From IMG/VR virus record IMGVR_UViG_3300034073_003542, positions 124,001-188,000 of that record: 64,000 nt of DNA. One strand, 5' to 3'. The position numbers and the translations under genes are program-made. A model generated the notes under the pieces. It was not told where the DNA came from. It worked only from the letters and a program-made list of their open reading frames with translations, and ran no database searches. Numbering within the stretch: position 1 is the stretch's first letter; each line of letters opens with the position of its first letter. Below, piece by piece: positions 5,580-52,561 of the stretch.

Positions 5580-6776
5580 ATGGAGAAAAATATGAATATC
5601 AAAACTCGCCGCTCTGCATTTACCCTTGTCGAACTTCTAGTTGTAATTGCTATTATTGGTTTATTAGTAGCAATTTTACTCCCAGCCCTTTCTTCTGCTA
5701 GAAATTCTGCTCAGGCAGCAGCAAGCGGATCAAATTTAAGCACATTTGGTCGTGGTTTCATGATTTTCTCCACAGAAGATAAGCGATCACGCATGAGTAG
5801 CGGCGCTTTTGATCATTTAAGAGATGGAGATGTTAGAAAAGTTGGATGGGTTGCTGATATTATTAGGATTAAGGTGTCAAATCCAGGTAAGGCGCTTGAT
5901 CCAGCTAATACTTATCAGGTAAATGAAAAGGTTGCCGACTATATTGGAGCTACCAATACAACTAAAGCTAATCCTGTTCGCTGGAATAATAAAACAGCAG
6001 ATGTTCATTTTGGTGGAGCTAATGGCCCCACAGATTTTGCTGGATCACCAACACAAGCACAAAAGAATAAATTATGGGAAGACGGATATAACACAAACTA
6101 TGCAACAACATGGCAGTTTAGTCGTGGCGATGTTGTTCCTGGGTCTGACGGAAAGATTAATTCTAATGGAGCTATGAATCCTGTAACATCTGATCCTTCT
6201 AAATGTCCTCTAGATGGTGACGGCCCATTAACAGAAAAGAAATTAACTGGTGGAGGAGTAAGTCGTGATAGAGTTGCTGTAATGGGTGCGGCTCGTCCAG
6301 GCGACGGTTCTGATGCTCTTGTTACTGATGCAATGTTTACCACCTTTAATAATTTCTTTGGAACAGATCAAACAATGATTACAACTGGAGGTATTTTAGT
6401 TGAATCATTTACTGATGGAATGAATTGTCCTTTTACTGATGTTACTCTTGGTGGTGGCACAGATCAAAAAATTCATGAAATTAATGATATTTTCCCTATT
6501 CATGGTTCTCGTAAAACAACTGTTGGAGCAAATACTCTTCTTACAGGAGGATATGCCCAAGTTTTATTTGCGGACGGTCACGTTGCCAAAATTGAGGATG
6601 TGGGCGGTTATCAAGATAATCCTGACAGTTGGCTAGGCCCATATAAAACTGGTGGTGTTCCAACAGCCTCTTCGTTTGAAATTAATAAGAGTGGCTATGA
6701 TGAAGTTAGAGAACTGATCTGGCTCCATCAAATAGGTAACTCGTCAGGTGGTGTTGGCGGAGGTTCTGTAGAGTAA
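5580..6776 (+). CDS. DUF1559-type prepilin N-terminal cleavage/methylation domain protein with H-X-DG C-terminal motif
   Basis: RRSA|FTLVELLVVIAIIGLLVAILLPALSSAR...SNL; C-terminal H...GGYAQVLFADGHV. Likely start at ATG 5592 after GGAG. Confidence 0.9.
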   Translation: MEKNMNIKTRRSAFTLVELLVVIAIIGLLVAILLPALSSARNSAQAAASGSNLSTFGRGFMIFSTEDKRSRMSSGAFDHLRDGDVRKVGWVADIIRIKVSNPGKALDPANTYQVNEKVADYIGATNTTKANPVRWNNKTADVHFGGANGPTDFAGSPTQAQKNKLWEDGYNTNYATTWQFSRGDVVPGSDGKINSNGAMNPVTSDPSKCPLDGDGPLTEKKLTGGGVSRDRVAVMGAARPGDGSDALVTDAMFTTFNNFFGTDQTMITTGGILVESFTDGMNCPFTDVTLGGGTDQKIHEINDIFPIHGSRKTTVGANTLLTGGYAQVLFADGHVAKIEDVGGYQDNPDSWLGPYKTGGVPTASSFEINKSGYDEVRELIWLHQIGNSSGGVGGGSVE

Positions 6777-7520: not shown

Positions 7521-8270
7521 TTAGTCTTTTACCTTATTCTCCTCTATCCACTTAATATACGAACTCACCCTGGTGTGACCAGACTCTTTATTATAGCGTC
7601 TACGTGTCTTTGTGTCAATCGTTTCCGATACAAAACTATTTACACCAGCTAATTTGCCGTCGATAAATAAACCGCCCCCACTATCACCGCTCTGTATAAA
7701 AAATCCAAGCTCTTTTTGTTGGCGTGTCCCAACAGGAAACGGACAAAAAATCATTTCTGGTTTTGATCTATAGATATAGTTTAATCCAGCCCTCTTATTT
7801 CCGTCATTATATAGTTTTTCGTCATGAAATCTCCCAGTAAATCCATAGCCAGCAACTTCCACCTTCTTACCTGTTTCGTTGCGATCAGTAAATAGTTCTG
7901 GATATTTATCTAATTCAAAGCTTTTCTGAGAATATCCTAGAGCTAAATCTACAGTCGCAAATGTTTTTGAGTTATAGTCTTTATGTATAAACACTTTTTC
8001 TAAAAGAAACTTTTTGGTCCCATGAACCACAACACAAATTTCTCTGTCATCAACAACATGAGCAGCCGATAAAACGTGGTGATCGTCAATCATTATACAA
8101 GAACCACAATAAACTCCACCCTTGTCATCAGAAGCAATCAATAAACACACAAAAGGAAACTCGTTACCTTTTTCTATGTATTTTTCGTCTTTAGTATTTG
8201 GGTCAGTAACGCCCCCATAAGATATGGCTGTTAGAAATATAGCTAACAATAGTTGTTTTAAATATGTCAT
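7521..8270 (-). CDS. Secreted trypsin-like (S1) serine protease
   Basis: Signal peptide; catalytic motifs VLSAAHV, DLAL, GDSGGGLF. Confidence 0.92.
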   Translation of the reverse strand: MTYLKQLLLAIFLTAISYGGVTDPNTKDEKYIEKGNEFPFVCLLIASDDKGGVYCGSCIMIDDHHVLSAAHVVDDREICVVVHGTKKFLLEKVFIHKDYNSKTFATVDLALGYSQKSFELDKYPELFTDRNETGKKVEVAGYGFTGRFHDEKLYNDGNKRAGLNYIYRSKPEMIFCPFPVGTRQQKELGFFIQSGDSGGGLFIDGKLAGVNSFVSETIDTKTRRRYNKESGHTRVSSYIKWIEENKVKD

Positions 8271-8333: not shown

Positions 8334-8711
8334 TTATTCTATAGATTTTAGCCATTCCCTATATCTTTTGGGCATATATCCTATTATTTTTCCTTTTTCT
8401 TTATCTTTATCAAATATCCTTGATTCTGGTATAGTCTTTATTCTATATTTCTTTTTAATCTCTTCGTCTTTTTCAATATCGATATAACACACGATATATT
8501 TATCTGATTCTGGAATACCGCCCAACAAAATGTCTCTTTTAAGTTTATGACAATAGGTACAGTATTCTGCCCCGAATATCACAAGGATCGGCCTGTTGGT
8601 TTTTTCGGCCAATTTTTGCGCTTCTGGTAACGACTCAATTATAAATCCTTCTGCTAAACTTGATGAACTAATGACTAGACCCAGAAATATCGCAATTAAT
8701 ATTTTTCGCAT
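8334..8711 (-). CDS. Exported thioredoxin-fold protein
   Basis: Signal peptide; FGAEYCTYCHKL (CxxC); cis-Pro loop TIP. Confidence 0.85.
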   Translation of the reverse strand: MRKILIAIFLGLVISSSSLAEGFIIESLPEAQKLAEKTNRPILVIFGAEYCTYCHKLKRDILLGGIPESDKYIVCYIDIEKDEEIKKKYRIKTIPESRIFDKDKEKGKIIGYMPKRYREWLKSIE

Positions 8712-9600
8712 GTTTACCTAGAATCCTTCCTTTTTGAGTTCTTTGAACCATCCCGGTTCTTAATAGATACGGCTCAATACTGTTTTCAATAGTGTCGATG
8801 GCAATACCTGTCATCGAACTAATTGCTTTCAGCCCTAATGGATTACCAATATTCTGTTGCAGAACTTGGATGTATATTCTATCATACACATCTAGCCCAT
8901 TTTCGTCTATCCCCTGTGTAGAAAATACTTCATCGACAGACAATTTGTTGTTATCTCCTGATGCTGTATACATTTGAAACCATTGAATACGGGCGTTTAA
9001 GATTCGGGGCGTTCCTTTACTACGCTTTGCAATCTCGCTCAGAGCTTCATTATCAAGATTTAATCCAAGACGCTCGGTATTAGCTTTTGCTAATTGTACA
9101 AGCTCTGGGGTATTATAAAATCTCAGATGTTCTTTGATTTGAAAACGATCATAAAACGGCTGACTAAGACTTCCTCCACTAGTTGTGGCCCCAATAAGAG
9201 TAAAGGCTGGAATAGCAATTTCCTCTGGTTCTTTTTCCAAAACGATATTGATTTTGAAATCTTCCATTACTGGATAAAGAAATTCTTCTACCAAAGTTGG
9301 CAAACGATGAATTTCGTCAATAAAAAGAACAGAGCGTTTAGTCATTCTCAATAGGTATGGAAGTATATTTTTGACCTTCCGAAGATTGGCGGCGTTTGTG
9401 ATATGGAGGTCAACCCCTAGCTCATGGGCAATAGCACCCGCCAACGTCGTTTTACCGAGGCCAGGAGGCCCGTCAATTAAAACATGGGGGTGGACGACCC
9501 CTGCGTTTTTACAGCCATCAGTAGTTACCCTAAGACGCTCTACCGTTTCGGTTTGACCAATAATATCACCAAAAGTTGTGGGACGAAAAGCAAGTGTCAT
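8668..9600 (-). CDS. ruvB: Holliday junction branch-migration AAA+ helicase RuvB
   Basis: FRPTTFGDIIGQ, GPPGLGKTT, LFIDEIHRL, EEFLYPVMEDF, FTLIGATT, DRF, RSKGTPR, C-terminal winged helix (IEPYLLR.G.VQRTQKGR). Confidence 0.96.
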   Translation of the reverse strand: MTLAFRPTTFGDIIGQTETVERLRVTTDGCKNAGVVHPHVLIDGPPGLGKTTLAGAIAHELGVDLHITNAANLRKVKNILPYLLRMTKRSVLFIDEIHRLPTLVEEFLYPVMEDFKINIVLEKEPEEIAIPAFTLIGATTSGGSLSQPFYDRFQIKEHLRFYNTPELVQLAKANTERLGLNLDNEALSEIAKRSKGTPRILNARIQWFQMYTASGDNNKLSVDEVFSTQGIDENGLDVYDRIYIQVLQQNIGNPLGLKAISSMTGIAIDTIENSIEPYLLRTGMVQRTQKGRILGKHAKNINCDISGSSH

Positions 9601-18844: not shown

Positions 18845-19194
18845 TGGTGGAGATGTTGGCATACGATAGCCAAGTCCTAAAAATATTTCAGATAGCTTTT
18901 CTACAAGTTTATTTTGTTCTTTTTAAGAGAAATTATAGAACAAACAACATTCTTTTCTCTTTGCTTGTTTATCTTAGTTTGTTGATACAAGCTTCAACAA
19001 AAGCAAAAGGATTTTACATCAACTTTTTGGACGCCTCCTTTTAGCTTCCTAAAGTTGTCGTAGCCGTTATTAGGCTGCGAGAGCTAATTGATTTACGTCA
19101 ATTAAACGTTTTTATCGACTTGTTAAAGTGGCCTGTCGATAAACCACTACTTGCTTTACTAACCTCTTTATTCTAGTCGAAACCTTTCATCCCC
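18845..19194 (-). ncRNA. ssrA: tmRNA (SsrA), 350 nt
   Basis: 5' GGGGAUGAAAGGUUUCGAC; 3' ...UUGGC-UAUCGUAU-GCCAA-CAUCUCC-A-CCA; acceptor stem with G3-U70; tag ORF (D)VNQLALAA followed by TAA TAA at 19099..19067; dedicated promoter. Confidence 0.95.
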
Positions 19195-21397: not shown

Positions 21398-21979
21398 TCA
21401 AGGCTCATACGATTTCGCCCCGGAGTTTTTTGTTTCGATATATTTTCTGTATTCGCTCATTATAATACCGCTTACAGTACCAACATTTAGAGAACGAACA
21501 CTTCCCCAATCCTTAATAGTATAAATCTTATCACAAGCTCCCAAAACATAATCGGAAAGCCCATGATTTTCTGACCCAAATACGAACAGGGGACTAATTA
21601 GATTTTTAAAATCCGCCCCATAAAGATCCTCTGTCTTATGAGAATACTTAGGGATATTGTTTTCGATAGCCACAATAGTACGATGTTGTTGACTATTAAT
21701 CAAGACTTCTTCTGTTTCGTAGTAATAAAGGGGCGTATAATTATATGTACCTACAGCACCCCTCTTATCCCACTTCTTTTTTCCAGCATAATGAACAGAA
21801 CTAAAACCAAAGAAATTGGCATTACGAACCAATGTGGAAAGATTAAAATCCCCCTCAACATTAATCATACATACAGACGCATCAATAGTATTATTGCGAC
21901 AATATTGTGCGATTTCTTCTACAGAAAGATTCTTTAGTGTGTCTTTTACGTTGAATGAATTAAATGAGTCTGGTGACAT
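21398..21979 (-). CDS. TrmH/SpoU-family RNA methyltransferase
   Basis: NVEGDFNLSTLVRNA, FVFGSENHGLS, VRSLNVGTVSGI (SPOUT motifs). Confidence 0.88.
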   Translation of the reverse strand: MSPDSFNSFNVKDTLKNLSVEEIAQYCRNNTIDASVCMINVEGDFNLSTLVRNANFFGFSSVHYAGKKKWDKRGAVGTYNYTPLYYYETEEVLINSQQHRTIVAIENNIPKYSHKTEDLYGADFKNLISPLFVFGSENHGLSDYVLGACDKIYTIKDWGSVRSLNVGTVSGIIMSEYRKYIETKNSGAKSYEP

Positions 21980-29026: not shown

Positions 29027-29493
29027 TATCTTGCCCTCGGAGGCATATCTCCTGTTCTTTGAATTTTATCAAGACGATCTTCTACTATATCAAGCCTATC
29101 TCTCATTTTTAGAAGTTGTTCAGTATCCTTACAGCTTTCTTTGGTAAAATAAAGCACATGCTCTACAAAACAATTAGTTTCATATTTATTGAGTTCTGCA
29201 CGAACAATAGCTACTATAGAAAGCAATATAGCGCCAACAGAAACAATCCATACGGAATAAGACTTCATAATATATTTCTCCTTTATTTATCTGTTCTAAT
29301 ATTTTTTACGCTATCTACTAATTCATCATTGATATAAACATCTATATAACAATCGCAGTTTGTGCCTTCTTCATACGTTTCTACATCAATTCCGCTCTGT
29401 AGTCTAGCATTATATTTATTTAAGAGCGACTTTAATTCTTGATAAAACGGTCCTGTTTTTTCATCAATCCACATAATATACCTCGATTAAAAA

Positions 29494-29685
29494 TATTGAT
29501 GGACGTTTTGCGTGAGCTTTTCAGGCTCCACCAGAAGTGCCTGCTAGTTGTTGTAGCGTTACACACCCAAGTATACCCCTGATTAACAACCGTATACTTG
29601 CTCTATCTCTGTCGCAATTAGTCTCCCGAAGGTCAGAATACGTCTGATCATGGCGGAATCTGCCGCCCCATCCCGTCCATCAATA
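29494..29685 (-). ncRNA. Unassigned structured ncRNA (~190 nt)
   Basis: ORF-free, GC-enriched intergenic segment closed by a perfect 12-bp terminal stem, with several internal hairpins; begins about 7 nt below a consensus -10. Confidence 0.7.
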
Positions 29686-29692
29686 CATACTT

Positions 29693-29720
29693 ATTATAGC
29701 ACAGGGATGGGGTTTGTCAA
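29693..29720 (-). promoter_or_regulatory. sigma70-type promoter (extended -10) of the candidate ncRNA
   Basis: TTGACA-N16-TATAAT with TGn. Confidence 0.85.
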
Positions 29721-31328
29721 GTGAGCAGATTGACACAATTTTAGTATCTCCATCCAGTTGTTTCACCAAAAGCATTATAAGAATTATCTCTATAAAGAGC
29801 TATTGACACTTTACCTTTTTCTCTCGCCTTATTCATTTCTCGCTCTACTATTTTTCTGTATTTTGGTTGAAGTCTATATTGATCTGAAATATTATCGAAA
29901 TAACACTCAACAAATTGGGCTAAAACTTCCGGTGGCCCCTGAATCCTCACCATAAATCCTTCTTCATCTAATTCAATATGAAGTTGATCTAATTTATCAA
30001 ATTCACCTACAACCCAATCGTCCGCAGCGAGTAGTATACCACAACTCAAAATAAGTGTCAATAAGGCGCGCATTTATCTTTTTGTTTTGTAGTTTTTAAG
30101 TTTCTTTCCATTCAATTTCGTGCTATCTAATTTTGATTCTAATTGATCTAATTCTTTAAGGGCTTCACCCAATTGTTTGTGAAGTTTTCTAATTTCTTTT
30201 ACTCTGAGTTTGTGAGTGGCATCTTCTTGCCAAATATTGTAAATGTTGGACTTTACTTCTAGTTCGCCAGAACCATCCTCAAAAATATTCCCCTTAATCT
30301 GCTTACCCTCAAAATCAACCCTATAAGCAATCTTATCAGAAGGTGGCTCTGATATATAGACCTTAATCATTTATTTCTCCTTATCATATATTTCCTGTAA
30401 CTTCTTTCCAAATTCTCCAAGAACAATAAGTTCTCCCAGCGTATCTGTAATATAATCATGAACCTCGTCATAAATTATATCTATAAATTCTTGTCTAAGT
30501 TTAGGTTGTGCGTTGAATAGGTCTAATACTTTTTTCTTATCTTGTCTCCATAGAAGATGTTCTACTAATTCAGATATAAGGAAATGAAACTTGAACTCAA
30601 ATCCGTCTGTTTTTTTATTCATTTTTATCCTTCTTAAACCCATCATTTATCATTAGTGGTCCCGTATGAAACACAGACAGCTTTTCATTATATAGAGGTA
30701 AATGAACTCCTACAACCCTATTTGTCTCTTGACATCTAAGTAAACAAATATCTGCCCCTTCACCCTTAATCCACTCTCCATAATGAGAAACAGTTGGATC
30801 AACTATTAATTCTACGGAATGACCATCCATATCGACATAAATAGACATTGATGGCTCATAGTTCTTAGCTTCTTCAATCAGTTTTGACATCATATAATTA
30901 AATCTGTCTACGTCATATTTTTGTCTCTCTTTAAAATCTTCATCATTTTGATCGGTCATTTTCTGGTTCCTTCTCTATTGTTAGAACATTAAGTGGGCCA
31001 GACAAATACCAGAATCCTCCCGATCCTTTTGTAGCAAGCCATTCTTTGCCCTCAATTACAACGATAGTATATTTTATATCACTGTTTGGGTTATGTACTT
31101 TAGTAATACCTCTTTCACAACCACAAAATATCAATAATAGCATCAATATTAGAGAATATTTCATTTTTCGTCCTTCTTTTTCTTTTTCTTCTTTTCGCTT
31201 CCTTGTTTTAGTTCTGCATACTTCTTGACGTTTTTCTCAAGACGTTTTATATATTCTTCTTGTTCTTCGGCTTTTTTACAAACTTTTTTAATTCGCTTTT
31301 TTGTCCAGTAGTCCCAAAATCCCATGTC

Positions 31329-31889
31329 TCAAAATGGCGACAGCCTATCCTCCTTGGTATTATCTGATAGTAATTTTAGATTTTCATATTTAGTAATAAT
31401 TTCAGAAAGCTCATTAACTAAATCTGGATCTGAATTTCGTAAAGCTCCTAGTAACAGTTTTGTTTCTTCAAAATATAATTTTGCAAATGATTCATTCCAA
31501 GGAATATCGAGACAGTTATCAATACGATCTATAAGTTTGATTGAGCGACATTCTCGCGGAATTAAAGCTAGATGTTCTCTGTCCATCCTTTTTCTTTGTT
31601 CTCTATTATATTCTGGATGTTTTTTGGATACATTTGTCAAGCACGAAACGTAATGACCTACTGTGCTTCCAAAAATATAATCTATTTCATTTTGAGTAAC
31701 TCCACAATCTTCTATAACGTCATGTAAATATGCCGCACACACAAGTTCCTCTGTGCTATAGTAAAGCATCATGGTCTTGGAGGCAACCCTCATTGGATGA
31801 AAGATATATGGATCGCCCGAATATTTACGAGTTTGATTTTTATGGGCTTCTCTAGCAAAATGGGCGGCTTGAATTATTCGGTTTTGCAT
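31329..31889 (-). CDS. HD-domain (p)ppGpp hydrolase-like (SpoT/Mesh1-type) protein
   Basis: AAHFAREAH..Q.RKYSGDPYIFHP..VA, AAYLHDVIED, IKLIDRIDN. Confidence 0.85.
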   Translation of the reverse strand: MQNRIIQAAHFAREAHKNQTRKYSGDPYIFHPMRVASKTMMLYYSTEELVCAAYLHDVIEDCGVTQNEIDYIFGSTVGHYVSCLTNVSKKHPEYNREQRKRMDREHLALIPRECRSIKLIDRIDNCLDIPWNESFAKLYFEETKLLLGALRNSDPDLVNELSEIITKYENLKLLSDNTKEDRLSPF

Positions 31890-32467: not shown

Positions 32468-32863
32468 TCATAACAACTTTAGATGTCCGCACAATTTATC
32501 TAATTCCTCAGAAAGATACGGCCCAAAAGCCGCACAAGTATTTGTGGGAACTCCATGAAATTCTGTAGCTCCATTATCTGTAATTAGGTGTGTTTCAATT
32601 CCTAACTCTTTTCCCTTTTCTACAAGTGCTAGTAATTCTTCTTCGGAGTCTACTGAGACACAAATTTTGGTGAAACTATTTTCGAGCCAGTGTTTTTCAA
32701 CTTCTGTTAGAAGAGTAGTATATTCATACAAAAGTCCACACTCTAAAGCTTGTTGCATACGTCTAGTTATAAAAGACATTGAGGCGTGAGAAACTTGTGC
32801 TGCGATTTTTCCTTTGCGCATATTGAGCTTTTTATTTACGACAATAACTTGTTTAGTGTTCAT
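32468..32863 (-). CDS. pth2: Peptidyl-tRNA hydrolase, Pth2 type
   Basis: KQVIVV...LNMRKGKIAAQVSHAS, TKICV, ITDNGATEF, TC.AFGP, LDKLCGHLKLL. Confidence 0.93.
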   Translation of the reverse strand: MNTKQVIVVNKKLNMRKGKIAAQVSHASMSFITRRMQQALECGLLYEYTTLLTEVEKHWLENSFTKICVSVDSEEELLALVEKGKELGIETHLITDNGATEFHGVPTNTCAAFGPYLSEELDKLCGHLKLL

Positions 32864-34990: not shown

Positions 34991-36630
34991 GCCTCAGACG
35001 ATCCCAAAATGCCGCATGATCTTTTCAACTATTGCATAAATTGCGTATGGAGGAAAAAATATAGCAAGTAATTTCCACCAACCTTGGGCAACAACCATTC
35101 CTGCAAAATACATAAACATTAACCAAACAGACGCCATATTTAAGGTTGGATATTTTTTAGCCTGCTTTTTTTTCTTTTTGGAGATTGGGGCGGGATTCAT
35201 CGGATACTCCTTTTTCGGTAGGATTATATAGGGTCTTAATTTTAATCATGAAGAATGTTCCGCAAAATGCTCCTGATGCTAATGGAATTAAATAGTAAAC
35301 ATTCTCCGAATAAGATATTACACCATAAGCAAGTAAAGAATAAATAACGCTTGTTGTTACTGCTCCCCTTAAAGCTTTGCCTTCATTGACGCATATTATA
35401 TAGTATGAATAAAGAGCATCTATAATAAAATAACATATGAAGATTTGTAGGGCTGTTATATATGAGAAGTCTGTACTATTCATGTTCGACCTTGGTACTT
35501 TAGATTAGACATATCAATCTGATATATCAAATATTTTCCGCCCAATAGCTCTTATTTCTTCTATGCTAATATCTTCAACAGTAGTCCAACTAACTTGGGG
35601 CAATTTTCTCCAGCCAGGAGGTTGCCAGATGCGATAAACCTGAAATAGTATTCCCCCTATTGCTCTAATTTCACCCTTTTTTAAGCCCTTTTCACTGCTT
35701 GTTAGAATTGCCCCAAATCCTCCCACCCATTCATATTCGATATGGTCAATAATAGCCGTAAAATGAGACGCTCTAAATCTTGCTTTTGTTAAGTCCACAT
35801 TGACCCCCTTAATTCTATGAGTTTGATTAATTTTTCTGTATCTTCTTTTTCGTATTGTTCTTCTAATTCTTCCGCTTGTTTGTATCTTTGTTTTTTGTCT
35901 AAGTAGTGAGATATTGGATTTTTGTTTTCTTTTTCTTCGTAGAAGTCCATCGGATCTTTTCTATTAGGGCGATGGATTGTCCACCATTCATAAAGTTCTC
36001 GAAATTGTTTCGCTGCTTCTATTTGGTGATCGGGACAAGGATATTCTTCATTCACACTGTTTTCGGCCCAAGCGACATATCTATAAAATCCTTCCTTACC
36101 TTTTTCGTTCTTTTTTCCAGATCGCCCACCTATTTCGCCCTCACAAAATTCATAACAGAAAGCATCAAACAAACAATGTAAGATACGAGTATCCATGTCG
36201 TACCATTCACCACGAGGAAGTTTACTTACAAGAGCGTGTGTATGATTAACGAAACGATTTCTATATTCGCACTGGATACTCCACCATAAATCACCTGGGA
36301 AGTATACAATATTTTGTAGTGTATCTAGGAATTCTTCAGCAAACCAATATCTCCAAGAATGTTTGGCTTTTAATTCTTTTCTCCAATTATCCCATCCTTC
36401 AAAAGAAAGATAGTGTGGTTTTTTCTCACCTCTGATCCAGTTCGCAAATTTAGAACATGACCAGTAATTGATTCGTGTGCGTTTTCTTAGCATCATACAA
36501 TTCGTGTTTATAAAAAAAGATAGCGTTTAGTCTTACAAAAGCAGCTATCAGTAAATCTACGGTTTTGCCTCGGACTTTTATATCCTATCGGGATACCCGC
36601 GACCCGAAACTTGTGTTTGGCAATATTACT

Positions 36631-36694: not shown

Positions 36695-37510
36695 TTACTT
36701 GTTTACTTTAATTAAATTTTTAACTTTGTTATATTTTCTTTTTAATCCAATATCTAAACGATCTTGATATAAATAGTTAGCTATTTTAACTACAGCATCC
36801 AAACTAGAAACACGTATTCTTGAATCTTTATGTCCTTTTTTTGATATATTTTTTTGAATTTTGTATTTTTTGATTTTGATCTTATTAAATAAAGATACTA
36901 TACTGGACCAATCTTGCTCGTATGTAGAACCAAGAATAAACTGTTTTGCTTTATTTGTAATATAAAAACATCCGTCTCCATCAAAATATCCTCTATAAAA
37001 TAGATAGTGCTTATTTTTAGGTATCAGTTTTAATAATTTATTTGGAGGAGTATAGTTTTTTTTGTTAAAGTCAAAAGATATTAATTTAGAAACAAGGGCT
37101 ATATCATTAATTGCAAGTGTAATATTTTTTTGTCTTTTAACTCCTTTTTTATCCACCCTCTCTTTTCTAATAAATAAACTCCACTTTCCTACTTTAGTAA
37201 AACAGTTTTTTAGGATCTTATAGTCAGTAAATAAAATTTGACACTGTAAACTACAATATTTATGATTTTTTGATGATTTATAAAGGAATCCATCAGCCCA
37301 TAAAAACCCTAAAATATAAATTTCTTCATCTGTTAAGTCTTTAAAAGATTTATTGTACCAATCTGTTTTTCTAGGAGCATATCTTCTAATATCATATTTA
37401 GAAAGTTGACCATAAACGTGATTGGTTGTACATCCTAATTTTTTAGCTATTAGAGAAGCGGGATTATTTTCTTTAATAAATAATCTATATAATAATTTCT
37501 TTGCTATCAT
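36695..37510 (-). mobile_element. Free-standing LAGLIDADG homing endonuclease
   Basis: Two motifs, YILGFLWADG and FYRGYFDGDG; N-terminal HTH. Confidence 0.88.
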
Positions 37511-39557: not shown

Positions 39558-40118
39558 TCATTTAAAAGCTAACTCCCAATGACTTGCACAAACAGGCAAA
39601 TATTTTTCTTCGCATCCTAATTCCACAGAATTACCTTCGATGGTAGGAATCCCATCTATCATTTTCAGATTGAATACAGCCTTTTGTCTACAATAAAAAC
39701 ACGTAGTCTTAATTTCATCAATAACATCAGCTATAGATAATAATAAAGCAGAAGCAGGAAATGGTTCTTTTCTAAAATCAGTTCTTAAACCATAACAAAT
39801 AATAGGTGGACTACCTGTATATGTAGCTCTCCTCATACATTTAATGATTTCGGTTGATAAAAATTGTACTTCATCAACTAAAATAATATCAGCATCTTCA
39901 TGCCAGCCAAACATAGTTTGGTCTTGTTGAATAATAAAATCCGCCTCGGTTTCTAATCCGGCTCTAGATTTTACCGTTCTTTCTCCAAAACGAGTATCAA
40001 TAGCTGGCTTAACTACATCTACTTTCTTACCTTGTTGACGATAAGAATGAGCGGTTGCTAATAAATCAAGCGTTTTGGCACTTCCTACAACCCCATACTT
40101 AAAATAGAGTTTAGCCAT
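39558..40118 (-). CDS. tdk: Thymidine kinase
   Basis: LYFKYG...AKT, VKSRAG, ILVDEVQFL, YGLRTDF, CxxC...C Zn site, YLPVC..H. Confidence 0.95.
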   Translation of the reverse strand: MAKLYFKYGVVGSAKTLDLLATAHSYRQQGKKVDVVKPAIDTRFGERTVKSRAGLETEADFIIQQDQTMFGWHEDADIILVDEVQFLSTEIIKCMRRATYTGSPPIICYGLRTDFRKEPFPASALLLSIADVIDEIKTTCFYCRQKAVFNLKMIDGIPTIEGNSVELGCEEKYLPVCASHWELAFK

Positions 40119-40987
40119 TATTTATATTCCTTATAACATTTATTGTTAGCTATTGAATTAATTATTCCATGACTGATATTATAGTCCTTAGCTATATGTC
40201 TATGTGTTTCTTTTCCTTTAGATAGTCTTTTTCTTATTTCTTTAACTTGTGTAAGATTTAATTTTCTTTGACTTAATAAATATTGTTCATATTTTATTCT
40301 TTGTTTTATTATCTTATCAAAATTTTTCTTTTTTCTTTTTAGGAATATTGTTGCGTCCTTATACATAAAATCCATTAGTTTTTTAATTTCTTTGTACCCA
40401 TATAATCTAATATCGCAAGTATAAGTGTTTTGTTTGGTTTTTTTATATTTTACCATAAAAGAAGATATATTTAATTTTCTTTTAAAGAACCTTAATAAAT
40501 ATTCACTAAAGTCACTATTAGAAATAATCATAAAGGTATATTTATTTTGATTTTTACTCTTCGTAACAGATATACCTCCATCACCATCAAAATATCCTCT
40601 TATAAAGTGATGAATTAAATTTTTAGGTATGTGTCTGTATGGAAATTTTAAGGTATAACTTTTTTGATTATCTAATCCCTTATTAATTAAGTGATTAGTA
40701 AAAATTTCTCCGTATATTTTGATATATTTATATTTACTTTGTTTATTTTTGTTGTTTGGAGTATAATGTTTCGAATCTCCTATTTTCCCAGAATATTTTG
40801 TGTACTTTTTAAAGTAACGCAATATCTCTATATCTCTAGCCTGTAATTCAATTTGAACGTACTTATTACTTTTCTTAGTAGAGATATGACCATCTGCACA
40901 TATAAATCCAAATAAATACGCTTTATCTTCTGTATCTATGACTTTAAAATAATCGTGATCTTTATTATGTATATGTTTATTATTCAT
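40118..40987 (-). mobile_element. Free-standing LAGLIDADG homing endonuclease
   Basis: AYLFGFICADG and HFIRGYFDGDG; C-terminal HTH. Confidence 0.88.
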
Positions 40988-42005
40988 TTTCTTTTAGCAG
41001 AAAGTTATTGTTGATGACTTTAAAACTTATATCTGAATCTTTACTTCTAACAACTATCCCCTCTGCTTGTTGTTGTGGAGAAGCGTTTGGAAAGAAGTCT
41101 TTATATTTTATGTCGGATAAAGTAAATAGCTCATTAATTGTATATTTAAAATTATCTCCTTGTTCGATAATTGGAACAAATTTAAGTTCTATTCTCTTTA
41201 TAATATCTAACGCATCGTCAATTGGTAGCTTTTTATTTGTTTCAATATCTACAACGTTGAATATATAGATGTCTGGTTCTGTTACCTTCATCTTATTTCC
41301 TTGTATATTTCCAATTACCTCTCCCTGAATAGCTACTTTAAATCCATCTTGATGTAATTTTCTAAGCTTATTTTCTATGTCATACTTCTCGCTTAGTTTC
41401 CAGAACATATGGTCGGGTTTTTCTTTGTATGAATAATTTCGCCCACAAACATGATAATCTCCCGCTGCATCAATTAAAAATGTGGATGATGTACCATCCA
41501 GCTTTAATGATATATAGTATGGGCGACCCCAAAGAGCCTCGATAAAACGATACTTGTCGTTATTCTGAACTCTTTCTTCGTCTGTCTTAGAAATAGGCCA
41601 ACTAAATCCGCCCTTAACATCTCCTTGAATAGCTGTTGGTACTGGTGGTTCATATTTTTCTATTCCTAGAAACTCTGTAACATCAGCACCTTCAACCGCT
41701 AAACCTATTTCTGGGAATTTATCTATAGGCATAGCAACGCCTTGGGATAAGACTTTTTTTAATTTTATGCTCTTGAGTCTATACTTGTTGATACCATCAC
41801 GCCAGCAGGATTTTTTAAGAAATTCGTAGCGAGGCTCGTCTGGCAATAGGCTGTCTATCTCAAAAAACAAACAGAGGTCGTCTACATTAAATTCATCTTT
41901 CTTGACAACGCATTGCCAATCAAGAATCTTAGCAAGAACAATCTGATCTGCCACCTCAATAGGAAGAATTTCTTTGATTTTTTGTATTGATGCTAGCTGA
42001 CGCAT
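40980..42005 (-). CDS. ATP-dependent RNA ligase (DRB0094/Rnl2-like)
   Basis: RQLASIQKI...ADQI..A.ILDWQCVVKK, KLDGTS, VCGRN, IQGEV, EGIVVR, FKVINNNFLLK. Confidence 0.92.
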   Translation of the reverse strand: MRQLASIQKIKEILPIEVADQIVLAKILDWQCVVKKDEFNVDDLCLFFEIDSLLPDEPRYEFLKKSCWRDGINKYRLKSIKLKKVLSQGVAMPIDKFPEIGLAVEGADVTEFLGIEKYEPPVPTAIQGDVKGGFSWPISKTDEERVQNNDKYRFIEALWGRPYYISLKLDGTSSTFLIDAAGDYHVCGRNYSYKEKPDHMFWKLSEKYDIENKLRKLHQDGFKVAIQGEVIGNIQGNKMKVTEPDIYIFNVVDIETNKKLPIDDALDIIKRIELKFVPIIEQGDNFKYTINELFTLSDIKYKDFFPNASPQQQAEGIVVRSKDSDISFKVINNNFLLKENE

Positions 42006-44110: not shown

Positions 44111-44156
44111 AAGGTGCCGCGATGTATGAGCAGATACTTCACGAATACTACCATAT

Positions 44157-44185
44157 ATTCTACCAGACACCCAGGGTTTTGTCAA
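44157..44185 (-). promoter_or_regulatory. sigma70-type promoter, face-to-face with the previous one
   Basis: TTGACA-N17-TAGAAT. Confidence 0.65.
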
Positions 44186-44230
44186 CTGCTCTTGACATTA
44201 TCTTGGGTTGTTTGTTTTTGGGATGTTAGG

Positions 44231-45076
44231 ATGAAAAAAACAAAGAAATGTAAACAGTGTGGAAAAAGAAAATCTATAGACAAATACTATAAACACAAGA
44301 CTTGTAAAGATGGATATAGAGATATTTGTAAGATATGTATTAATAAATTATCTAAAGAATATGTAGAGAAAAATAAAGAAAAAATTGCCCAACGACAAAA
44401 AAAATATAGAGAAAAAAATAAAGAAAAGCTTTCTCAACAAAGAAAAGACTATAGAGAGAAAAATAAAGAAAAGGTCAAAAAACAAAAACAGGCCAACTAT
44501 TTAAAACACAAAAATAAGACATTACAAAAAAGTAAAGAATATAAAGAAAAACTTAAAAAAGAAAATCCAGAAAAATTAAAATTATGGCGAAAAAATTATT
44601 GTATTAGACATAAAAATAAATTAAAAGAATATAAGCGAAACTATCACCAAAAAAACAAAGTAAAAATAAGAAATATAAGGAATAAATATAGAAAATATAA
44701 ATACGATTCAGATATTGGATATAGAATGCAAGAGAATATTAGGAGTAGAATGAGATATCTCTTGAAAGGATATTATAAAAGTAAAGCCACACTAGAATTA
44801 TTAGGATGTTCGGACGATCAACTTAAAAAACATCTAGAAAAACAATTTGAGCCAAGTATGACTTGGGATAATTACGGATATTATGGGTGGCATATTGACC
44901 ATATCAGACCATGTTCTAGTTTTGATTTATCTGATCTAGAACAACAAAAACAGTGCTTTCATTATACGAATTTACAGCCATTATGGGCAAAAGACAATTA
45001 TATTAAAGGTAATAAGATACCTATTTCTTCCAGTGATGATCTTCATGGCCTGCCATTAAACACCCATACGGAATAA
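44231..45076 (+). mobile_element. HNH homing endonuclease (inverted orientation)
   Basis: CKQC...CKIC, Lys-rich helical repeats, WHIDHIRPC...CFHYTNLQPLWAKDN; start placed at MKKTKK. Confidence 0.85.
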
Positions 45077-46409
45077 TTTCATCCACTATATTTCCAAGAT
45101 TAAATTTTTGGATTTGGTTCTTTACTTTTTCAGCATTTTTATAAGCAGATGGAAGTTCTGTTATATCCATTTTTCCTGTGTAGAATCTTACATCTAGACC
45201 CCTAGTATCTTCATCAAACAATTCATATCCTGTTTTGTTTTGTAGAGATATTTTAGTGTATTCAGTTCTACTCATTTCGCGGCCAGCACCATGACTTGTA
45301 AAACCTAAATTAGTTTCGGTTTCTTCTCCATTAACAATAAGAATACCATCTCTCATATTAAGAGGTATTAATCTTAGACCATTAGTTGAGTCAGGAACAA
45401 ATTCATTTAATAATGGTGTTGCTCCTTTGGCATGGATGTAAGTATTATCTTTTTTAAACACAAAATTATGTTCATTCCAATAATTGTCATGTATATTTAC
45501 ATTAATTTTACTAGCAATTTCCGTATGAATAAGCGTATGATTTAGCTTTGTCCATTCTCTAACTACTTGTAAAGCGTTCCAATATGTAACACCTTCTTCT
45601 GTGTCCATTGGAATCCAGCCTAAATTATCATTAACGTTTGGAGCTATTTCTTTACGAAACTTCTCAGCTATGTCATTTCCCTTCTTGAATAATAAAGCTC
45701 CGAAAGAGCGACTGCCATGATGAGTAACTAATACTGTTTCTCCAGAGCTTTTTAAGTAGCCTACAAATAGGAAATGGTTGCCGTTTCCTTGAGTTCTTAA
45801 ATCTTTTTGGGCTTTATCTAGACTTTTTTCTCCAGATAAATATAGATTGTTAAGAATATCGTTCTTTAAAGGTTCTGGTATAATATCTTTTGGATTTTGT
45901 CTTCCACCAGCACCAAAATGTGTTATTTTTTCTGCTTTATCTAGGACAATTTTTGGATCTATTTTTCCTAGATTAGAAAACATAACTGAACAACATACGT
46001 CGGCACTGTGAAATTTTGGGTGGATTGCATTTAAAGTTTGTATGACTCCACCCACAGGAATATCAAACTCGCCCGTAGGGCAAGCGTCAGGCATCACAGC
46101 AGCATTTATAGCGGTTGGAGCCACCAAAATATTGTGCATAGCCCGCGTGACCGAAAACATATTGTTAACTTCGGCCTCATTTTTTGGGTCGATTTCTATA
46201 TTGCAATGAAAATTGATTGGTTCATCCCTTGGTTCCATTGTTTTTGGTGGAAGAGGAACAAAACGTGTCTGAATTTCGTTATACAGATTTTCTTCGCTGT
46301 ACTTGTCTCGATTTTGATTTGCCCACTCAATAGCTGACTTAAACCATTTCCCAGGGGTAAAACCCATACTGATTAAAGATTGACCAGTAATTGACATCAT
46401 ACACCTCAC
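45021..46409 (-). CDS. rtcB: RtcB-family RNA 2',3'-cyclic phosphate ligase
   Basis: VMPDACP, IPVGG, ADVCC, GNGNHF, THHGSR, HN, HAKGATP, SHGAGR.MSR, ELPSAYK. Confidence 0.93.
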   Translation of the reverse strand: MRCMMSITGQSLISMGFTPGKWFKSAIEWANQNRDKYSEENLYNEIQTRFVPLPPKTMEPRDEPINFHCNIEIDPKNEAEVNNMFSVTRAMHNILVAPTAINAAVMPDACPTGEFDIPVGGVIQTLNAIHPKFHSADVCCSVMFSNLGKIDPKIVLDKAEKITHFGAGGRQNPKDIIPEPLKNDILNNLYLSGEKSLDKAQKDLRTQGNGNHFLFVGYLKSSGETVLVTHHGSRSFGALLFKKGNDIAEKFRKEIAPNVNDNLGWIPMDTEEGVTYWNALQVVREWTKLNHTLIHTEIASKINVNIHDNYWNEHNFVFKKDNTYIHAKGATPLLNEFVPDSTNGLRLIPLNMRDGILIVNGEETETNLGFTSHGAGREMSRTEYTKISLQNKTGYELFDEDTRGLDVRFYTGKMDITELPSAYKNAEKVKNQIQKFNLGNIVDEIIPYGCLMAGHEDHHWKK

Positions 46410-51783: not shown

Positions 51784-51855
51784 AGACCGCAGTTGGAATC
51801 GAACCAACAAATGCTGTTTTGCAGACAGCCACCAACGCCAATTGATTTTGCGGCC
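51784..51855 (-). tRNA. tRNA-Cys(GCA)
   Basis: GGCCGCA/TGCGGTC acceptor stem, GCTGT-CTGCAAA-ACAGC anticodon arm, GTTGG-TTCGATT-CCAAC T-arm, U73 discriminator; no encoded CCA; promoter at 51882..51909. Confidence 0.92.
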
Positions 51856-51913: not shown

Positions 51914-52561
51914 TTAATTTTGACCTCCCATTGCACTAAGTTCTTCTGGAGTATAAGAGCAATTAACTTCTGCTCCCCTACTTTTAGCCGTTCTCATTCT
52001 CTTGACGTTAGAAGCCGCAGAACTAAATGCTGCAAAAGAATTTGCCGCCGCATAATTTGCCACTCCAAGAGCATTAATTCCCATAGAAGTAGCATTAGAG
52101 AAAGCGTCTTGATTAGCTCCAAGGAATGTAAATTTCCAACTATAAACATTAGTCTGATGTTCAATCATTTGTTTAATTTGGTCTAATTTAAATTCATGGC
52201 TAGAATTTTCTCCTCCATCAGTAACTATAACAAAAGTTACCAATCCTGGGCGGTCTTTTTCTTCCATATTACTTAATCTTGCACCAGCTTCATTAATAGA
52301 ACGTCCTACTGCATCTAGAAGTGCCGTCATTCCGCGAGGAACAAGATTATATTCTTTTACATTTTGAATAGATTCACCCTTATATACAAAATTATATTCA
52401 TTATCAAACTCTACAAGAGTAAGCAAACATTCTCCAGGTTCCTTTTTTTGTTCAGAAATAAAGTGGTTGATACCGTTTTGTGCTTCTATTTTTGTAGCCT
52501 CCATTGAACCACTTCTGTCAACAATTAATGTTACGTCTGTTAAATCGTTTCTCATTTTCAT
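51914..52561 (-). CDS. vWA-domain protein
   Basis: IVDRSGSM (MIDAS DxSxS), GMTALLDAVG, IVTDGGENSS, FTFLGANQDA. Confidence 0.92.
   Translation of the reverse strand: MKMRNDLTDVTLIVDRSGSMEATKIEAQNGINHFISEQKKEPGECLLTLVEFDNEYNFVYKGESIQNVKEYNLVPRGMTALLDAVGRSINEAGARLSNMEEKDRPGLVTFVIVTDGGENSSHEFKLDQIKQMIEHQTNVYSWKFTFLGANQDAFSNATSMGINALGVANYAAANSFAAFSSAASNVKRMRTAKSRGAEVNCSYTPEELSAMGGQN

What the first reader, a model, noticed from the sequence alone, without database searches (positions are those of the whole stretch)
29494..29720. Unassigned ~190-nt multibranched ncRNA with a dedicated promoter
Seen: an ORF-free intergenic region whose ends form a perfect 12-bp stem (TATTGATGGACG 29494..29505 / CGTCCATCAATA 29674..29685). 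The 5' arm starts about 7 nt below a TGn-TATAAT box. Internal helices: GGCGG/CCGCC (29652..29667), TCAGA/TCTGA (29633..29647), a cUUCGg loop (29625..29632), a perfect 9-bp CAAGTATAC/GTATACTTG (29568..29600) and GAGC/GCTC (29514..29528). It has no tRNA, tmRNA, SRP or 6S hallmarks that I can recognise. Inference: a novel phage RNA, for example a sponge or antitoxin mimic, a protein scaffold, or an RNAP/Cas decoy.
Basis: partly seen in the sequence, partly recalled or inferred. Interest (0 to 1): 0.8.

Follow-up and report, generated by a model that had tools for sequence, protein, structure and literature searches.

The report
New structured small RNA of phages
This gene-free stretch of an uncultured T4-like phage encodes a previously undescribed, intricately folded RNA of about 200 nt whose fold is kept by dozens of compensating mutations in relatives; its function is unknown, but it behaves like an exchangeable accessory gene.

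Summary
The RNA lies on the minus strand (about 29688 to 29489). A perfect TTGACA-16-TGcTATAAT promoter places +1 at the foot of a 13-bp closing stem, and the stem is followed by UUUUU. Rfam gives no hit even at E<=10. It is not a tRNA, tmRNA, Y RNA, 6S RNA or T4 rnaC/rnaD.

A 16-mer scan recovered diverged homologs in a second, unrelated T4-like lineage (L149/L209, L207, L208; 60-74% identical). On four sequences, 94.6% of cells are paired against 29-43% in slid controls. 29 pairs change on both sides, against 0-3 in the controls. A 6-bp loop-loop pseudoknot also covaries. The single-stranded motifs GGAUGG, CAGAUU, AUGA and AGACUAAU are invariant.

In lineage 2 the RNA lies antisense to all its neighbours, so it is a stand-alone gene there, not a leader. 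One locus shows three states: absent, allele A and allele B. 54 of 57 differences over 2.6 kb fall inside the RNA.

Function is not shown. My best guess is a trans-acting folded RNA that binds a protein or other factor, perhaps in phage-host conflict. No transcript ends were measured.

The parts
29693..29720 (-). Sigma-70 early-type promoter: -35 TTGACA 29720-29715, 16-nt spacer, TG 29701-29700, -10 TATAAT 29698-29693. Predicted +1 at about 29686-29688.
   Evidence: 12/12 match with TG extension. It is one of five promoters in the window that have both 12/12 and TG. It is conserved together with the RNA in the X6 contig, whose homology ends 2 nt upstream of the -35.
29674..29686 (-). P1 5' arm: 13 nt, of which 12 form Watson-Crick pairs and one is a G.U pair at the base.
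   Evidence: In homologs 8 of the 13 pairs change on both sides and 100% of cells are paired.
29668..29673 (-). Invariant single-stranded junction GGAUGG.
   Evidence: Identical in all four sequences.
29652..29667 (-). H2 hairpin GGCGG-CAGAUU-CCGCC, with an invariant loop.
   Evidence: The stem becomes CACGG/CCGUG in X4, CAUGG/CCAUG in L149 and CGUGG/CCACG in L207/L208. 3 of 5 pairs are compensated.
29648..29651 (-). Invariant linker AUGA.
29633..29647 (-). H3 hairpin UCAGA-CGUAU-UCUGA.
   Evidence: Becomes UCGGA/UCCGA in L149 and CCAGA/UCUGG in L207/L208. The loop varies only U/C, in X6 and L149.
29625..29632 (-). H4 mini-hairpin CC-UUCG-GG with a UNCG tetraloop.
   Evidence: The loop is UUCG in the window and L149, and UGCG in L207/L208. 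The stem is invariant.
29617..29624 (-). Invariant single-stranded AGACUAAU.
   Evidence: Identical in all four sequences. It is part of the 16-mer that recovered L149.
29568..29600 (-). H5a: 9-bp hairpin with a 15-nt loop. Loop bases GUUGUU (29590-29585) form one side of the loop-loop pseudoknot.
   Evidence: The stem sequence is entirely different in L149 (GCUAAUC/GAUUAGU) and in L207 (GCCAAAUC/GGUUUGGU), but it stays paired.
29536..29567 (-). H5b: two-tier hairpin with loop CAACAAC. Loop bases AACAAC (29552-29547) pair with the H5a loop.
   Evidence: Both tiers covary. The loop-loop pairing GUUGUU/AACAAC becomes GUUGCU/AGCAAC in L149 and GUUGCU/GGCAAC in L207/L208. Within the window alone p is about 0.03.
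29532..29535 (-). P5 3' strand UCUG, pairing with CAGA at 29608-29611. This short helix closes the H5a/H5b three-way junction and is tentative.
   Evidence: Constrained fold. 92.9% of cells are paired and 2 of 4 pairs are compensated on A7. The register is uncertain.
29510..29531 (-). H6 hairpin GUG(G)AGC-CUGAAAA-GCUCAC, found only in the window lineage.
   Evidence: Present in the window fold and absent from L149, L207 and L208. X6 has a loop change only.
29493..29505 (-). P1 3' arm.
29489..29493 (-). U5 run, the presumed 3' end or a leaky intrinsic terminator. It is followed by the RBS and ATG of the 63-aa ORF (29474-29283).
   Evidence: Homology of the X6 contig stops exactly at 29489.

Best explanation
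The locus is a gene for a stand-alone, highly structured small RNA of about 190-200 nt that belongs to a previously undescribed family.

Shown. The fold is a 13-bp closing stem around a multi-helix junction. The 5' domain has three short hairpins (H2, H3, H4) separated by invariant single-stranded motifs. The 3' domain is a three-way junction whose two hairpins (H5a, H5b) touch through a 6-bp loop-loop pseudoknot. The fold is under strong purifying selection on the minus strand. The element, together with its promoter, is a discrete and exchangeable module found in two unrelated T4-like phage lineages and in different gene contexts.

Inferred. Host sigma-70 RNA polymerase transcribes it from the consensus early promoter, starting at the foot of P1. 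The transcript ends, at least partly, at P1 plus the U-run. The paired ends make the RNA stable. It acts in trans as a folded molecule: the invariant unpaired motifs (GGAUGG, CAGAUU, AUGA, AGACUAAU) are displayed on a freely covarying scaffold and bind a protein or other factor. The presence/absence and allele turnover at one locus suggest an accessory role in phage-host conflict, such as a decoy or sponge.

My confidence is about 0.9 that it is a real, independent structured RNA gene, about 0.55 that it works in trans by binding a factor, and about 0.25-0.3 that this is specifically counter-defence.
For: Promoter and ends. There is a 12/12 promoter with TG on the minus strand, with +1 at the stem base, and U5 follows the 3' arm. 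Of 34 such promoters, nearly all lie 6-50 nt from a start codon. The largest exceptions are the tmRNA (342 nt) and this RNA (218 nt), and only those two transcripts are significantly structured.

No coding potential or known family. No ORF is called in the gap in any assembly. Rfam gives 0 hits at E<=10.

Natural variants. X4 has two double compensations in H2. X6 T29676C gives G.U on the minus strand but A.C on the plus strand. All 10 listed substitutions are either unpaired or pair-preserving on the minus strand, and the chance of two or more double compensations is 6e-4.

Homologs. L149, L207 and L208 were found with a 16-mer and the covariance model. Replacing the MFE structure by the comparative one raised their scores from 56-70 to 89-106 bits.

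Covariation. 94.6% of cells are paired against 29-43% in slid controls. 29 pairs are doubly changed against 0-3 in the controls. 0 of 500 shuffles reach the observed values. In the hand-anchored table, 27 of 48 helix positions are compensated and none is non-canonical, and the pseudoknot covaries.

Module behaviour. X6 homology spans exactly 29489-29722, with unlike flanks on both sides. In L207 the RNA is on the strand opposite to all neighbours. A 389-nt indel removes it in L206. 54 of 57 differences between L209 and L207 over 2587 nt lie inside the RNA: identity is 99.88% outside and 70.7% inside.

Expression hint. In a wastewater RNA-seq run, apart from one short low-identity piece, the only part of the 5 kb represented is a 179-nt contig on the RNA, at depth 22.
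Against: No transcript ends were measured. The X4 contig reaches 29703, about 15 nt upstream of the predicted +1, and the tool warns that DNA can be present in RNA libraries.

The comparative set is small: four full sequences making three alleles, plus partial variants. Alignment A7 was fitted to the model, and L149 is misaligned in H5a.

P1 with a 168-nt interior and an AU-rich base is an atypical intrinsic terminator. In the window the next three ORFs have no strong promoter of their own, so some transcripts must read through, and the RNA is then also a 5' leader.

The promoter in lineage 2 is only a 10/12 match and would leave a leader of about 13 nt.

No partner protein was found. The small neighbouring ORFs have no Pfam or PHROG domain, and the two lineages share no neighbouring gene.

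The conflict or decoy role rests only on turnover pattern and context.
Confidence: 0.6

Rival explanations
1. Cis-acting 5' leader (attenuator, riboswitch-like sensor or mRNA stabiliser) of the downstream early ORFs. P1 plus the U-run would be a regulated terminator, and the 5'-terminal stem would protect the mRNA.
For: In the window there is no strong promoter between the RNA and the next three ORFs (63 aa, 80 aa, phosphoesterase). An RBS and ATG follow 15 nt after the U-run. In X6 another gene also starts just after the module. The architecture, a closing stem with a junction and conserved unpaired bases, resembles an aptamer.
Against: In lineage 2 no co-directional gene follows. The RNA converges on the 69-aa ORF, and all nearby genes are on the other strand. 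The downstream genes differ in every context. A 13-17-bp perfect P1 is too stable for a ligand-gated switch, which is my inference. No Rfam riboswitch matches.
Confidence: 0.12
2. Base-pairing regulatory sRNA. One of the invariant unpaired motifs, for example AGACUAAU or GGAUGG, would be a seed that pairs with host or phage mRNAs.
For: It is a stand-alone transcription unit with a 3' stem and U-rich tail, and it has short invariant single-stranded stretches.
Against: No complementarity to phage translation-start regions, the tmRNA or the tRNA exceeds shuffled controls. Conservation is spread over many loops and junctions plus a pseudoknot, which is typical of complex-folded RNAs rather than seed-type sRNAs (inference). 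The host genome is unknown, so host targets could not be tested.
Confidence: 0.12
3. Y-RNA-like partner of a Ro60 (Rsr) protein within the phage's RNA-repair toolkit.
For: The ends are paired in a long stem. The window encodes RtcB, an RNA ligase, a tmRNA and PTH2. A related phage encodes TROVE/Ro60 and RlaP, and RlaP sits exactly where the RNA sits in the window.
Against: There is no TROVE homolog in the 64-kb window (best E 0.21), and none at the position syntenic with L007. The GNCGAA(N)G and GGUCCGA motifs are absent, and there is no T- or D-arm. The length is about 200 nt against 80-130 nt (PMC4201824). The family model R3 finds no member in about 125 viral Ro60 loci.
Confidence: 0.03
4. 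DNA-level element rather than an RNA: a MITE, a bidirectional terminator or cruciform, a recombination site, or an origin with a priming promoter.
For: It has a perfect terminal inverted repeat with TA at both ends. It is part of an indel cassette. In L206 a simple hairpin occupies the site. A 12-bp inverted repeat is expected by chance.
Against: It is single-copy in the window. The conserved unit extends 37 nt beyond the inverted repeat, to the -35 element, and 5 nt on the other side. Seven internal helices and a pseudoknot covary. The G.U-type changes fit one strand only. GC is raised rather than AT-rich as an unwinding element would be.
Confidence: 0.03
5. Catalytic or self-assembling RNA: a new ribozyme, or an RNA that multimerises through intermolecular GUUGYU/RRCAAC loop pairing.
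For: It has a complex fold with invariant unpaired nucleotides and covarying complementary loops. Covariation cannot tell intramolecular from intermolecular pairing.
Against: No known ribozyme family matches. The two hairpins are adjacent arms of one junction and of similar length, so intramolecular docking is the simpler reading (inference). There is no experimental evidence.
Confidence: 0.08

Closest known systems
Bacterial and phage Y RNAs (YrlA/YrlB; Chen et al. 2014, PMC4201824)
   Same: A stable small RNA whose 5' and 3' ends form a long stem around a structured module. It is found in phages that carry RNA-repair genes.
   Different: It has no Ro-binding motif and no tRNA-like T or D arms, and it is about twice as long. 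No Ro60 gene is nearby, and no family member is found in about 125 viral Ro60 loci.
Phage T4 small stable RNAs rnaC (species 1) and rnaD (species 2)
   Same: Orphan stable RNAs of T4-type phages whose function is unknown.
   Different: The T4 RNAs sit at the end of the tRNA cluster and are annotated as 139 and 119 nt. rnaC carries a canonical T-arm. The covariance model finds no similarity. The present RNA has its own promoter and is not next to tRNAs.
Three-way-junction aptamers with docked loops (purine-riboswitch type) and phi29 pRNA loop-loop pairing. Both resemblances are recalled from memory, so they are leads and not tests.
   Same: Two side-by-side hairpins from one junction are joined by Watson-Crick loop-loop pairs that covary.
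   Different: No Rfam purine, pRNA or other family hit at E<=10. The domain is larger and is embedded in a 190-nt RNA. There is no expression platform or cognate gene, and the phage type is unrelated to phi29.
Orphan complex-folded RNAs frequent in phages and prophages (ROOL, GOLLD; 10.1101/2024.12.08.627333)
   Same: A structured, covariation-supported RNA of unknown function carried by phages, possibly relying on loop-mediated tertiary or quaternary contacts.
   Different: It is 3-4 times smaller, has no sequence or structure match in Rfam, and is so far seen only in two uncultured T4-like lineages.
6S RNA
   Same: About 190 nt, with a closing stem formed by the two ends, and abundant.
   Different: It is not a rod with a central bubble. 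It is a multi-hairpin junction supported by covariation, and Rfam 6S does not match.

Membership tests
Y RNA / YrlA | Long stem formed by the 5' and 3' ends | tested here: met
   13-bp P1.
Y RNA / YrlA | Ro-binding motif GNCGAA(N)G (bacterial) or GGUCCGA near the 5' end (PMC4201824) | tested here: not met
   No exact match, and no match with one mismatch for GGUCCGA.
Y RNA / YrlA | Conserved T-arm and D-arm-like stem-loops (tRNA mimicry) | tested here: not met
   No GUUCRANYC or UUCRA motif. ARAGORN finds nothing at default or 80% thresholds.
Y RNA / YrlA | Encoded within about 4 kb of a Ro60/TROVE gene on the same strand | tested here: not met
   tblastn of seven viral TROVE proteins against the window gives a best E of 0.21. 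R3 finds no member in about 125 TROVE loci. The rest of the 160-210-kb genome was not examined.
Y RNA / YrlA | Length 80-130 nt | tested here: not met
   About 200 nt in the window and 184-191 nt in homologs.
tRNA / tmRNA | Cloverleaf or tRNA-like domain recognised by ARAGORN or by Rfam RF00005/RF00023 | tested here: not met
   Only a spurious 'tRNA-Gln with an 84-nt intron' appears, on the plus strand at the 60% threshold.
6S RNA | Rod-like helix with a large central bubble; Rfam RF00013 | tested here: not met
   No Rfam hit at E<=10. The covariation-supported fold is a multi-hairpin junction.
Known riboswitch or ribozyme classes | Match to any Rfam 15 covariance model | tested here: not met
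   0 hits at E<=10 for the window RNA. Only noise (13 bits against gathering scores of 77-95) for L207.
Type III antitoxin RNA (ToxI-like) | Tandem direct repeats of about 34-36 nt upstream of an endoribonuclease toxin gene | tested here: not met
   TRF finds no repeats in 29300-29900. The downstream ORFs are 63 and 80 aa with no Pfam or PHROG family.
MITE / IS-derived element | Terminal inverted repeats that bound the conserved unit; multiple copies; target-site duplication | tested here: not met
   The inverted repeat is present, but the element is single-copy in 64 kb and the conserved unit extends beyond the repeat to the promoter and the U-run. The flanking TA is ambiguous because it is palindromic.
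T4 rnaC / rnaD | Sequence or structure similarity; position at the end of the tRNA cluster | tested here: not met
   R1 finds nothing in T4 68.5-74.5 kb. rnaC has a T-arm that is absent here. The only tRNA in the window is 22 kb away.
Intrinsic (rho-independent) terminator | GC-rich hairpin with a short loop, directly followed by a U-tract | tested here: inconclusive
   A U5 run directly follows P1, but the 'loop' is 168 nt and the stem base is AU-rich. The consensus scan does not call it. Lineage 2 has UAUUU.

The most novel reading that the evidence does not exclude
This is the founding member of a new functional class of phage RNA. It would be a complex-folded, trans-acting RNA expressed at the very start of infection and used in phage-host conflict, for example as a structural decoy that titrates a host defence or RNA-decay protein, or as a self-assembling or catalytic RNA. 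Its alleles are swapped among otherwise identical phages (99.88% identity outside the gene, 70.7% inside) because the target is under arms-race selection.
Probability: 0.2. Interest if true: 0.85.

Novelty: new variant of a known kind. Interest (0 to 1): 0.62.

Why it matters
Stand-alone structured RNAs of phages are few, and most are orphans. This one has unusually clean support for so rare an element. About 30 base pairs covary, as does a loop-loop pseudoknot, and four sequence motifs are invariant. It occurs in two unrelated uncultured T4-like lineages. Its population pattern is typical of accessory conflict genes: within one phage species it is absent, or present as one of two alleles that are only 71-74% identical, in otherwise near-identical genomes.

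It gives a concrete candidate, small enough for biochemistry and structure work, for an RNA-based host-takeover or counter-defence function. It also provides a ready covariance model for finding more members. If it turns out to be only a leader or stabiliser, it is still a new RNA family worth depositing.

Tried and rejected
- Known families: Rfam at gathering thresholds and at E<=10, and ARAGORN, gave nothing.
- Deposited phages: blastn of the window and L207 alleles against 50,697 phage genomes gave no match.
- Flanking-protein routes:
  - The 110-aa ORF led to relatives (L007-L009) that carry RlaP instead of the RNA.
  - The 63-aa ORF has no homologs.
  - The phosphoesterase led to L063-L065, which have no RNA.
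- Ro60 idea: no TROVE in the window. R1 and R3 find nothing in about 125 TROVE loci. A profile scan for TROVE could not show whether the rest of this genome has one, because there are 386 loci and only 80 are shown.
- Exact-word scans: two 20-mers in metagenome contigs and genome contigs returned nothing. Two viral 16-mer scans gave only chance hits besides the window's own contigs. The third gave L149, plus two chance hits (L147, L148).
- MITE: single copy, and the conserved unit is not bounded by the inverted repeat.
- Type III or type I toxin-antitoxin: no repeats; no consistent antisense partner; the small ORFs beside the RNA in the two lineages are unrelated.
- T4 rnaC/rnaD: no similarity.
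- Trans targets in the window: duplex energies are no better than with shuffled RNA.
- Other long promoter-proximal leaders in the window: unstructured, with z scores between -1.4 and +0.9.
- L063 505-nt gap: looks like an uncalled membrane-protein ORF.
- CsrA-type GGA motifs, tRNA anticodon mimicry and C/D-box or k-turn readings were considered by eye only and not pursued.

Full report
**1. The observation**

The 266-nt gap 29475-29740 lies between two minus-strand ORFs, 29741-30073 (110 aa) and 29283-29474 (63 aa). The inverted repeat 29494-29505/29674-29685 is the only perfect repeat of at least 12 bp with arms no more than 400 nt apart in the window. By itself it is not remarkable, because composition-preserving shuffles give 3.2 such repeats per 64 kb. 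The predicted +1 (29686-29688) is at the foot of the stem. The 3' arm is followed directly by UUUUU (29493-29489), and then by the RBS and ATG of the 63-aa ORF. The RNA is therefore read from about 29688 to 29489 on the minus strand.

**2. Genome context**

The window is part of a 160-210-kb uncultured myovirus (IMG/VR UViG 3300035670_000020 and 3300034073_003542; all assemblies are identical here). The sequencing runs flagged as possible sources of the window are subsurface metagenomes. It encodes:
- rIIA;
- RtcB, an RNA ligase, thymidine kinase and LAGLIDADG endonucleases;
- ThyX, UvdE and a SpoU methylase;
- PTH2 and an HD_4 protein;
- a tmRNA and a tRNA-Cys.

The minus strand carries 34 near-consensus sigma-70 promoters, against 3 on the plus strand. 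Almost all of them lie 6-50 nt from a start codon. The two largest exceptions are the tmRNA promoter (342 nt) and this one (218 nt), and only those two transcripts fold significantly better than shuffles. The element has 47% GC in a 33% GC neighbourhood, which puts it in the top 0.7% of 200-nt windows. No gene caller placed an ORF in the gap in any of four assemblies.

**3. Not a known RNA**

Rfam 15 gives no hit even at E<=10. ARAGORN gives nothing at sensible thresholds. There are no tandem repeats, and blastn against 50,697 phage genomes finds nothing.

The Y-RNA idea arose because a related contig encodes Ro60/TROVE and RlaP, so I tested it against the published criteria (PMC4201824). There is no GNCGAA(N)G or GGUCCGA motif and no T or D arm, and the RNA is about twice the expected length. 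No TROVE gene is in the window or at the syntenic position. No family member occurs in about 125 viral Ro60 loci.

T4 rnaC and rnaD are unrelated. rnaC has a canonical T-arm, and the covariance model finds nothing in that T4 region.

**4. Natural variation near the window's lineage**

- A freshwater DNA contig (X6) is homologous over exactly 29489-29722, from the -35 element to the U-run, with 11 differences. It is unlike the window on both sides, so the promoter plus RNA forms a discrete module.
- A closer freshwater relative (X7) has 2 differences in 119 nt of the RNA, against 17 in 199 nt of the adjacent ORF.
- In a wastewater RNA-seq run (X4), apart from a 53-nt low-identity piece elsewhere, the only part of the 5 kb represented is a 179-nt contig on the RNA (depth 22). 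It carries G29652C/C29667G and G29653A/C29666T, two double compensations in the GGCGG/CCGCC hairpin.

All ten listed substitutions are either unpaired or pair-preserving on the minus strand. T29676C gives G.U on the minus strand but A.C on the plus strand. Random substitutions give two or more double compensations in only 128 of 200,000 trials. This also shows that the MFE fold, which opens that hairpin, is wrong. Enforcing the hairpin costs only 2.2 kcal/mol.

**5. Diverged homologs**

A 16-mer from an invariant stretch, filtered with the covariance model, recovered L149, a contig of a second T4-like lineage. Look-ups with a neighbouring protein then gave further assemblies of that lineage. 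These loci encode gp13, gp15, sheath, gp19, an NAD-dependent ligase and glycosyltransferases. Two alleles were found there: L149/L209, and L207/L208. They are 60-64% identical to the window RNA and 74% identical to each other. No protein in these loci matches any window protein by tblastx, and this lineage also has no close cultured relative.

**6. Structure**

The closing stem has a completely different sequence in lineage 2 but is still a perfect stem of 13 bp, extendable to 17. H2, H3, H5a and both tiers of H5b also change sequence while keeping their pairing. The UUCG loop becomes UGCG, which is still a UNCG tetraloop. GGAUGG, CAGAUU, AUGA and AGACUAAU are invariant.

The loops of H5a and H5b are complementary over 6 bp (p about 0.03 in the window alone), and this pairing covaries: GUUGUU/AACAAC, GUUGCU/AGCAAC and GUUGCU/GGCAAC.

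Rebuilding the single-sequence model with the comparative structure raised the homolog scores from 56-70 to 89-106 bits. On the resulting alignment, 94.6% of cells are paired, against 29-43% when partners are slid by 1-3 columns. 29 pairs change on both sides, against 0-3 in the slid controls. 0 of 500 shuffles reach any observed measure.

Caveats: there are only four sequences, making three alleles. The alignment was fitted to the model. L149 is misplaced in H5a, which counts against the structure rather than for it. P5 is short and its register is uncertain. H6 is specific to the window lineage.

**7. Gene behaviour**

In lineage 2 the RNA lies on the strand opposite to all its neighbours. 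It diverges from a 145-aa gene across an 85-nt AT-rich spacer that contains a 10/12 promoter match, and it converges on a 69-aa ORF whose stop codon is 8 nt from the RNA's 3' end. So it cannot be a 5' leader there.

Three sibling assemblies lack it. A clean 389-nt indel removes the 69-aa ORF and all but the first ~14 nt of the RNA, leaving a small hairpin.

Between L209 and L207, 54 of the 57 differing columns over 2587 nt are inside the 184-nt RNA. Identity is 99.88% outside and 70.7% inside. This points to allele replacement at this locus rather than in-place divergence. The small ORFs next to the RNA in the two lineages are unrelated.

**8. Interpretation**

Shown: this is a new, strongly constrained RNA fold, carried as a module with its own promoter, in two unrelated phage lineages and in variable contexts.

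Inferred: it is transcribed early by host RNA polymerase and ends, at least partly, at P1 plus the U-run. It is stable because its ends are paired. It acts in trans through the invariant unpaired motifs displayed on a covarying scaffold. Complex-folded RNAs with this conservation pattern are usually ribonucleoprotein components, ligand binders or ribozymes rather than seed-type antisense RNAs; that statement rests on general knowledge and was not tested here. The absent/allele A/allele B pattern resembles accessory conflict loci, so a decoy or sponge role is my leading guess, at about 0.25-0.3.

In the window the promoter must also feed the downstream ORFs by read-through, so a dual role as leader and small RNA is possible. 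The rivals (cis leader, base-pairing sRNA, Y RNA, DNA element, ribozyme or multimer) are weighed in the Rival explanations section.

**9. Limits**

- No transcript ends were measured. The X4 contig reaches 15 nt upstream of the predicted +1, and it may contain DNA or read-through transcript.
- All collection scans were exhausted, and R3 could be run only on about 1.24 Mb of held loci.
- The hosts are unknown.
- The part of the genome outside the window was not examined for Ro60 or other partners.

Noticed in passing
window 18845-19194 (-), promoter 19232-19205: Phage-encoded tmRNA (Rfam, 96.9 bits) that ARAGORN does not call. It has its own 12/12 promoter and ends in CCA. By eye, the reading frame before the UAAUAA stop ends in ...NQLALAA.
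   Followed up: partly
window 21398-21979, 31329-31889, 32468-32863, 40980-42005, 45021-46409, 55692-56543: A dense RNA-repair and translation-rescue toolkit: SpoU methylase, HD_4 (RelA/SpoT-type hydrolase), PTH2, an RNA ligase with the PHA02142 OB fold, RtcB (only residues 194-451 match the profile) and a weak MYG1-like exonuclease. Contigs L007, L063 and L064, from two runs with adjacent accession numbers and related to this phage, add Ro60/TROVE, RlaP and Thg1.
   Followed up: partly
whole window: 34 near-consensus sigma-70 promoters (at least 11/12, many with TG and a cTTGACAaa context) on the minus strand, against 3 on the plus strand. This is a very promoter-dense early region of small ORFs.
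   Followed up: yes
window 29648-29671 (-) and the same place in L149, L207 and X4: The invariant GGAUGG ... CAGAUUCC ... AUGA can also be read as a 6-7-codon mini-ORF, M-(G/A)-(R/W)-Q-I-P-(P/R)-stop(UGA). It has no Shine-Dalgarno sequence, and the variable codons change non-synonymously in step with the H2 stem. It is probably a by-product of RNA constraints.
   Followed up: no
L209 35-218 against L207 9221-9411: A hyper-divergent island: 54 of 57 differences over 2.6 kb between two otherwise 99.88% identical phages lie in the RNA gene. The changes are mostly A/U in one allele to G/C in the other (39% against 53% GC).
   Followed up: yes
L206 9380-9420 (-): In the RNA-less sibling phage, the first ~14 nt of the P1 5' arm remain and run into a short hairpin (AGAAUCA-UGC-UGAUUCU). 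This may be the ancestral terminator, or the scar of the 389-nt indel.
   Followed up: partly
contig logan:SRR13425445_65247 (the part upstream of L007; no DNA returned): A 470-nt gene-free gap lies directly upstream of the phage Ro60/TROVE gene. It is a plausible place for a phage Y RNA, but it could not be read.
   Followed up: no
window 35595-35614 / 35697-35716: A second inverted repeat (20-nt arms, 80% complementary, 82 nt apart). It lies inside a called 94-aa ORF.
   Followed up: no
window 51784-51855 and 51914-52561: tRNA-Cys lies immediately downstream of a 215-aa protein with a weak von Willebrand A domain hit. BLAST shows no similarity to the vWA domain of Ro60.
   Followed up: partly
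window 5580-6776 (+), 44114-45076 (+), 7521-8270 (-), 8668-9600 (-): There are two rare plus-strand ORFs. One has a prepilin-type N-terminal methylation motif. The other (320 aa, no family) has its own plus-strand promoter and overlaps the 3' end of RtcB. The window also has a trypsin-like protease and a RuvB-like ATPase.
   Followed up: no
window 36695-37510, 40118-40987; L007 733-1578; L063 7917-8858: Several LAGLIDADG homing endonuclease genes are scattered through the early regions of this phage group, in keeping with heavy mosaicism.
   Followed up: no
L206/L207 1-844: In lineage 2, a glycosyltransferase of 827 aa carries an intein-splicing domain hit.
   Followed up: no
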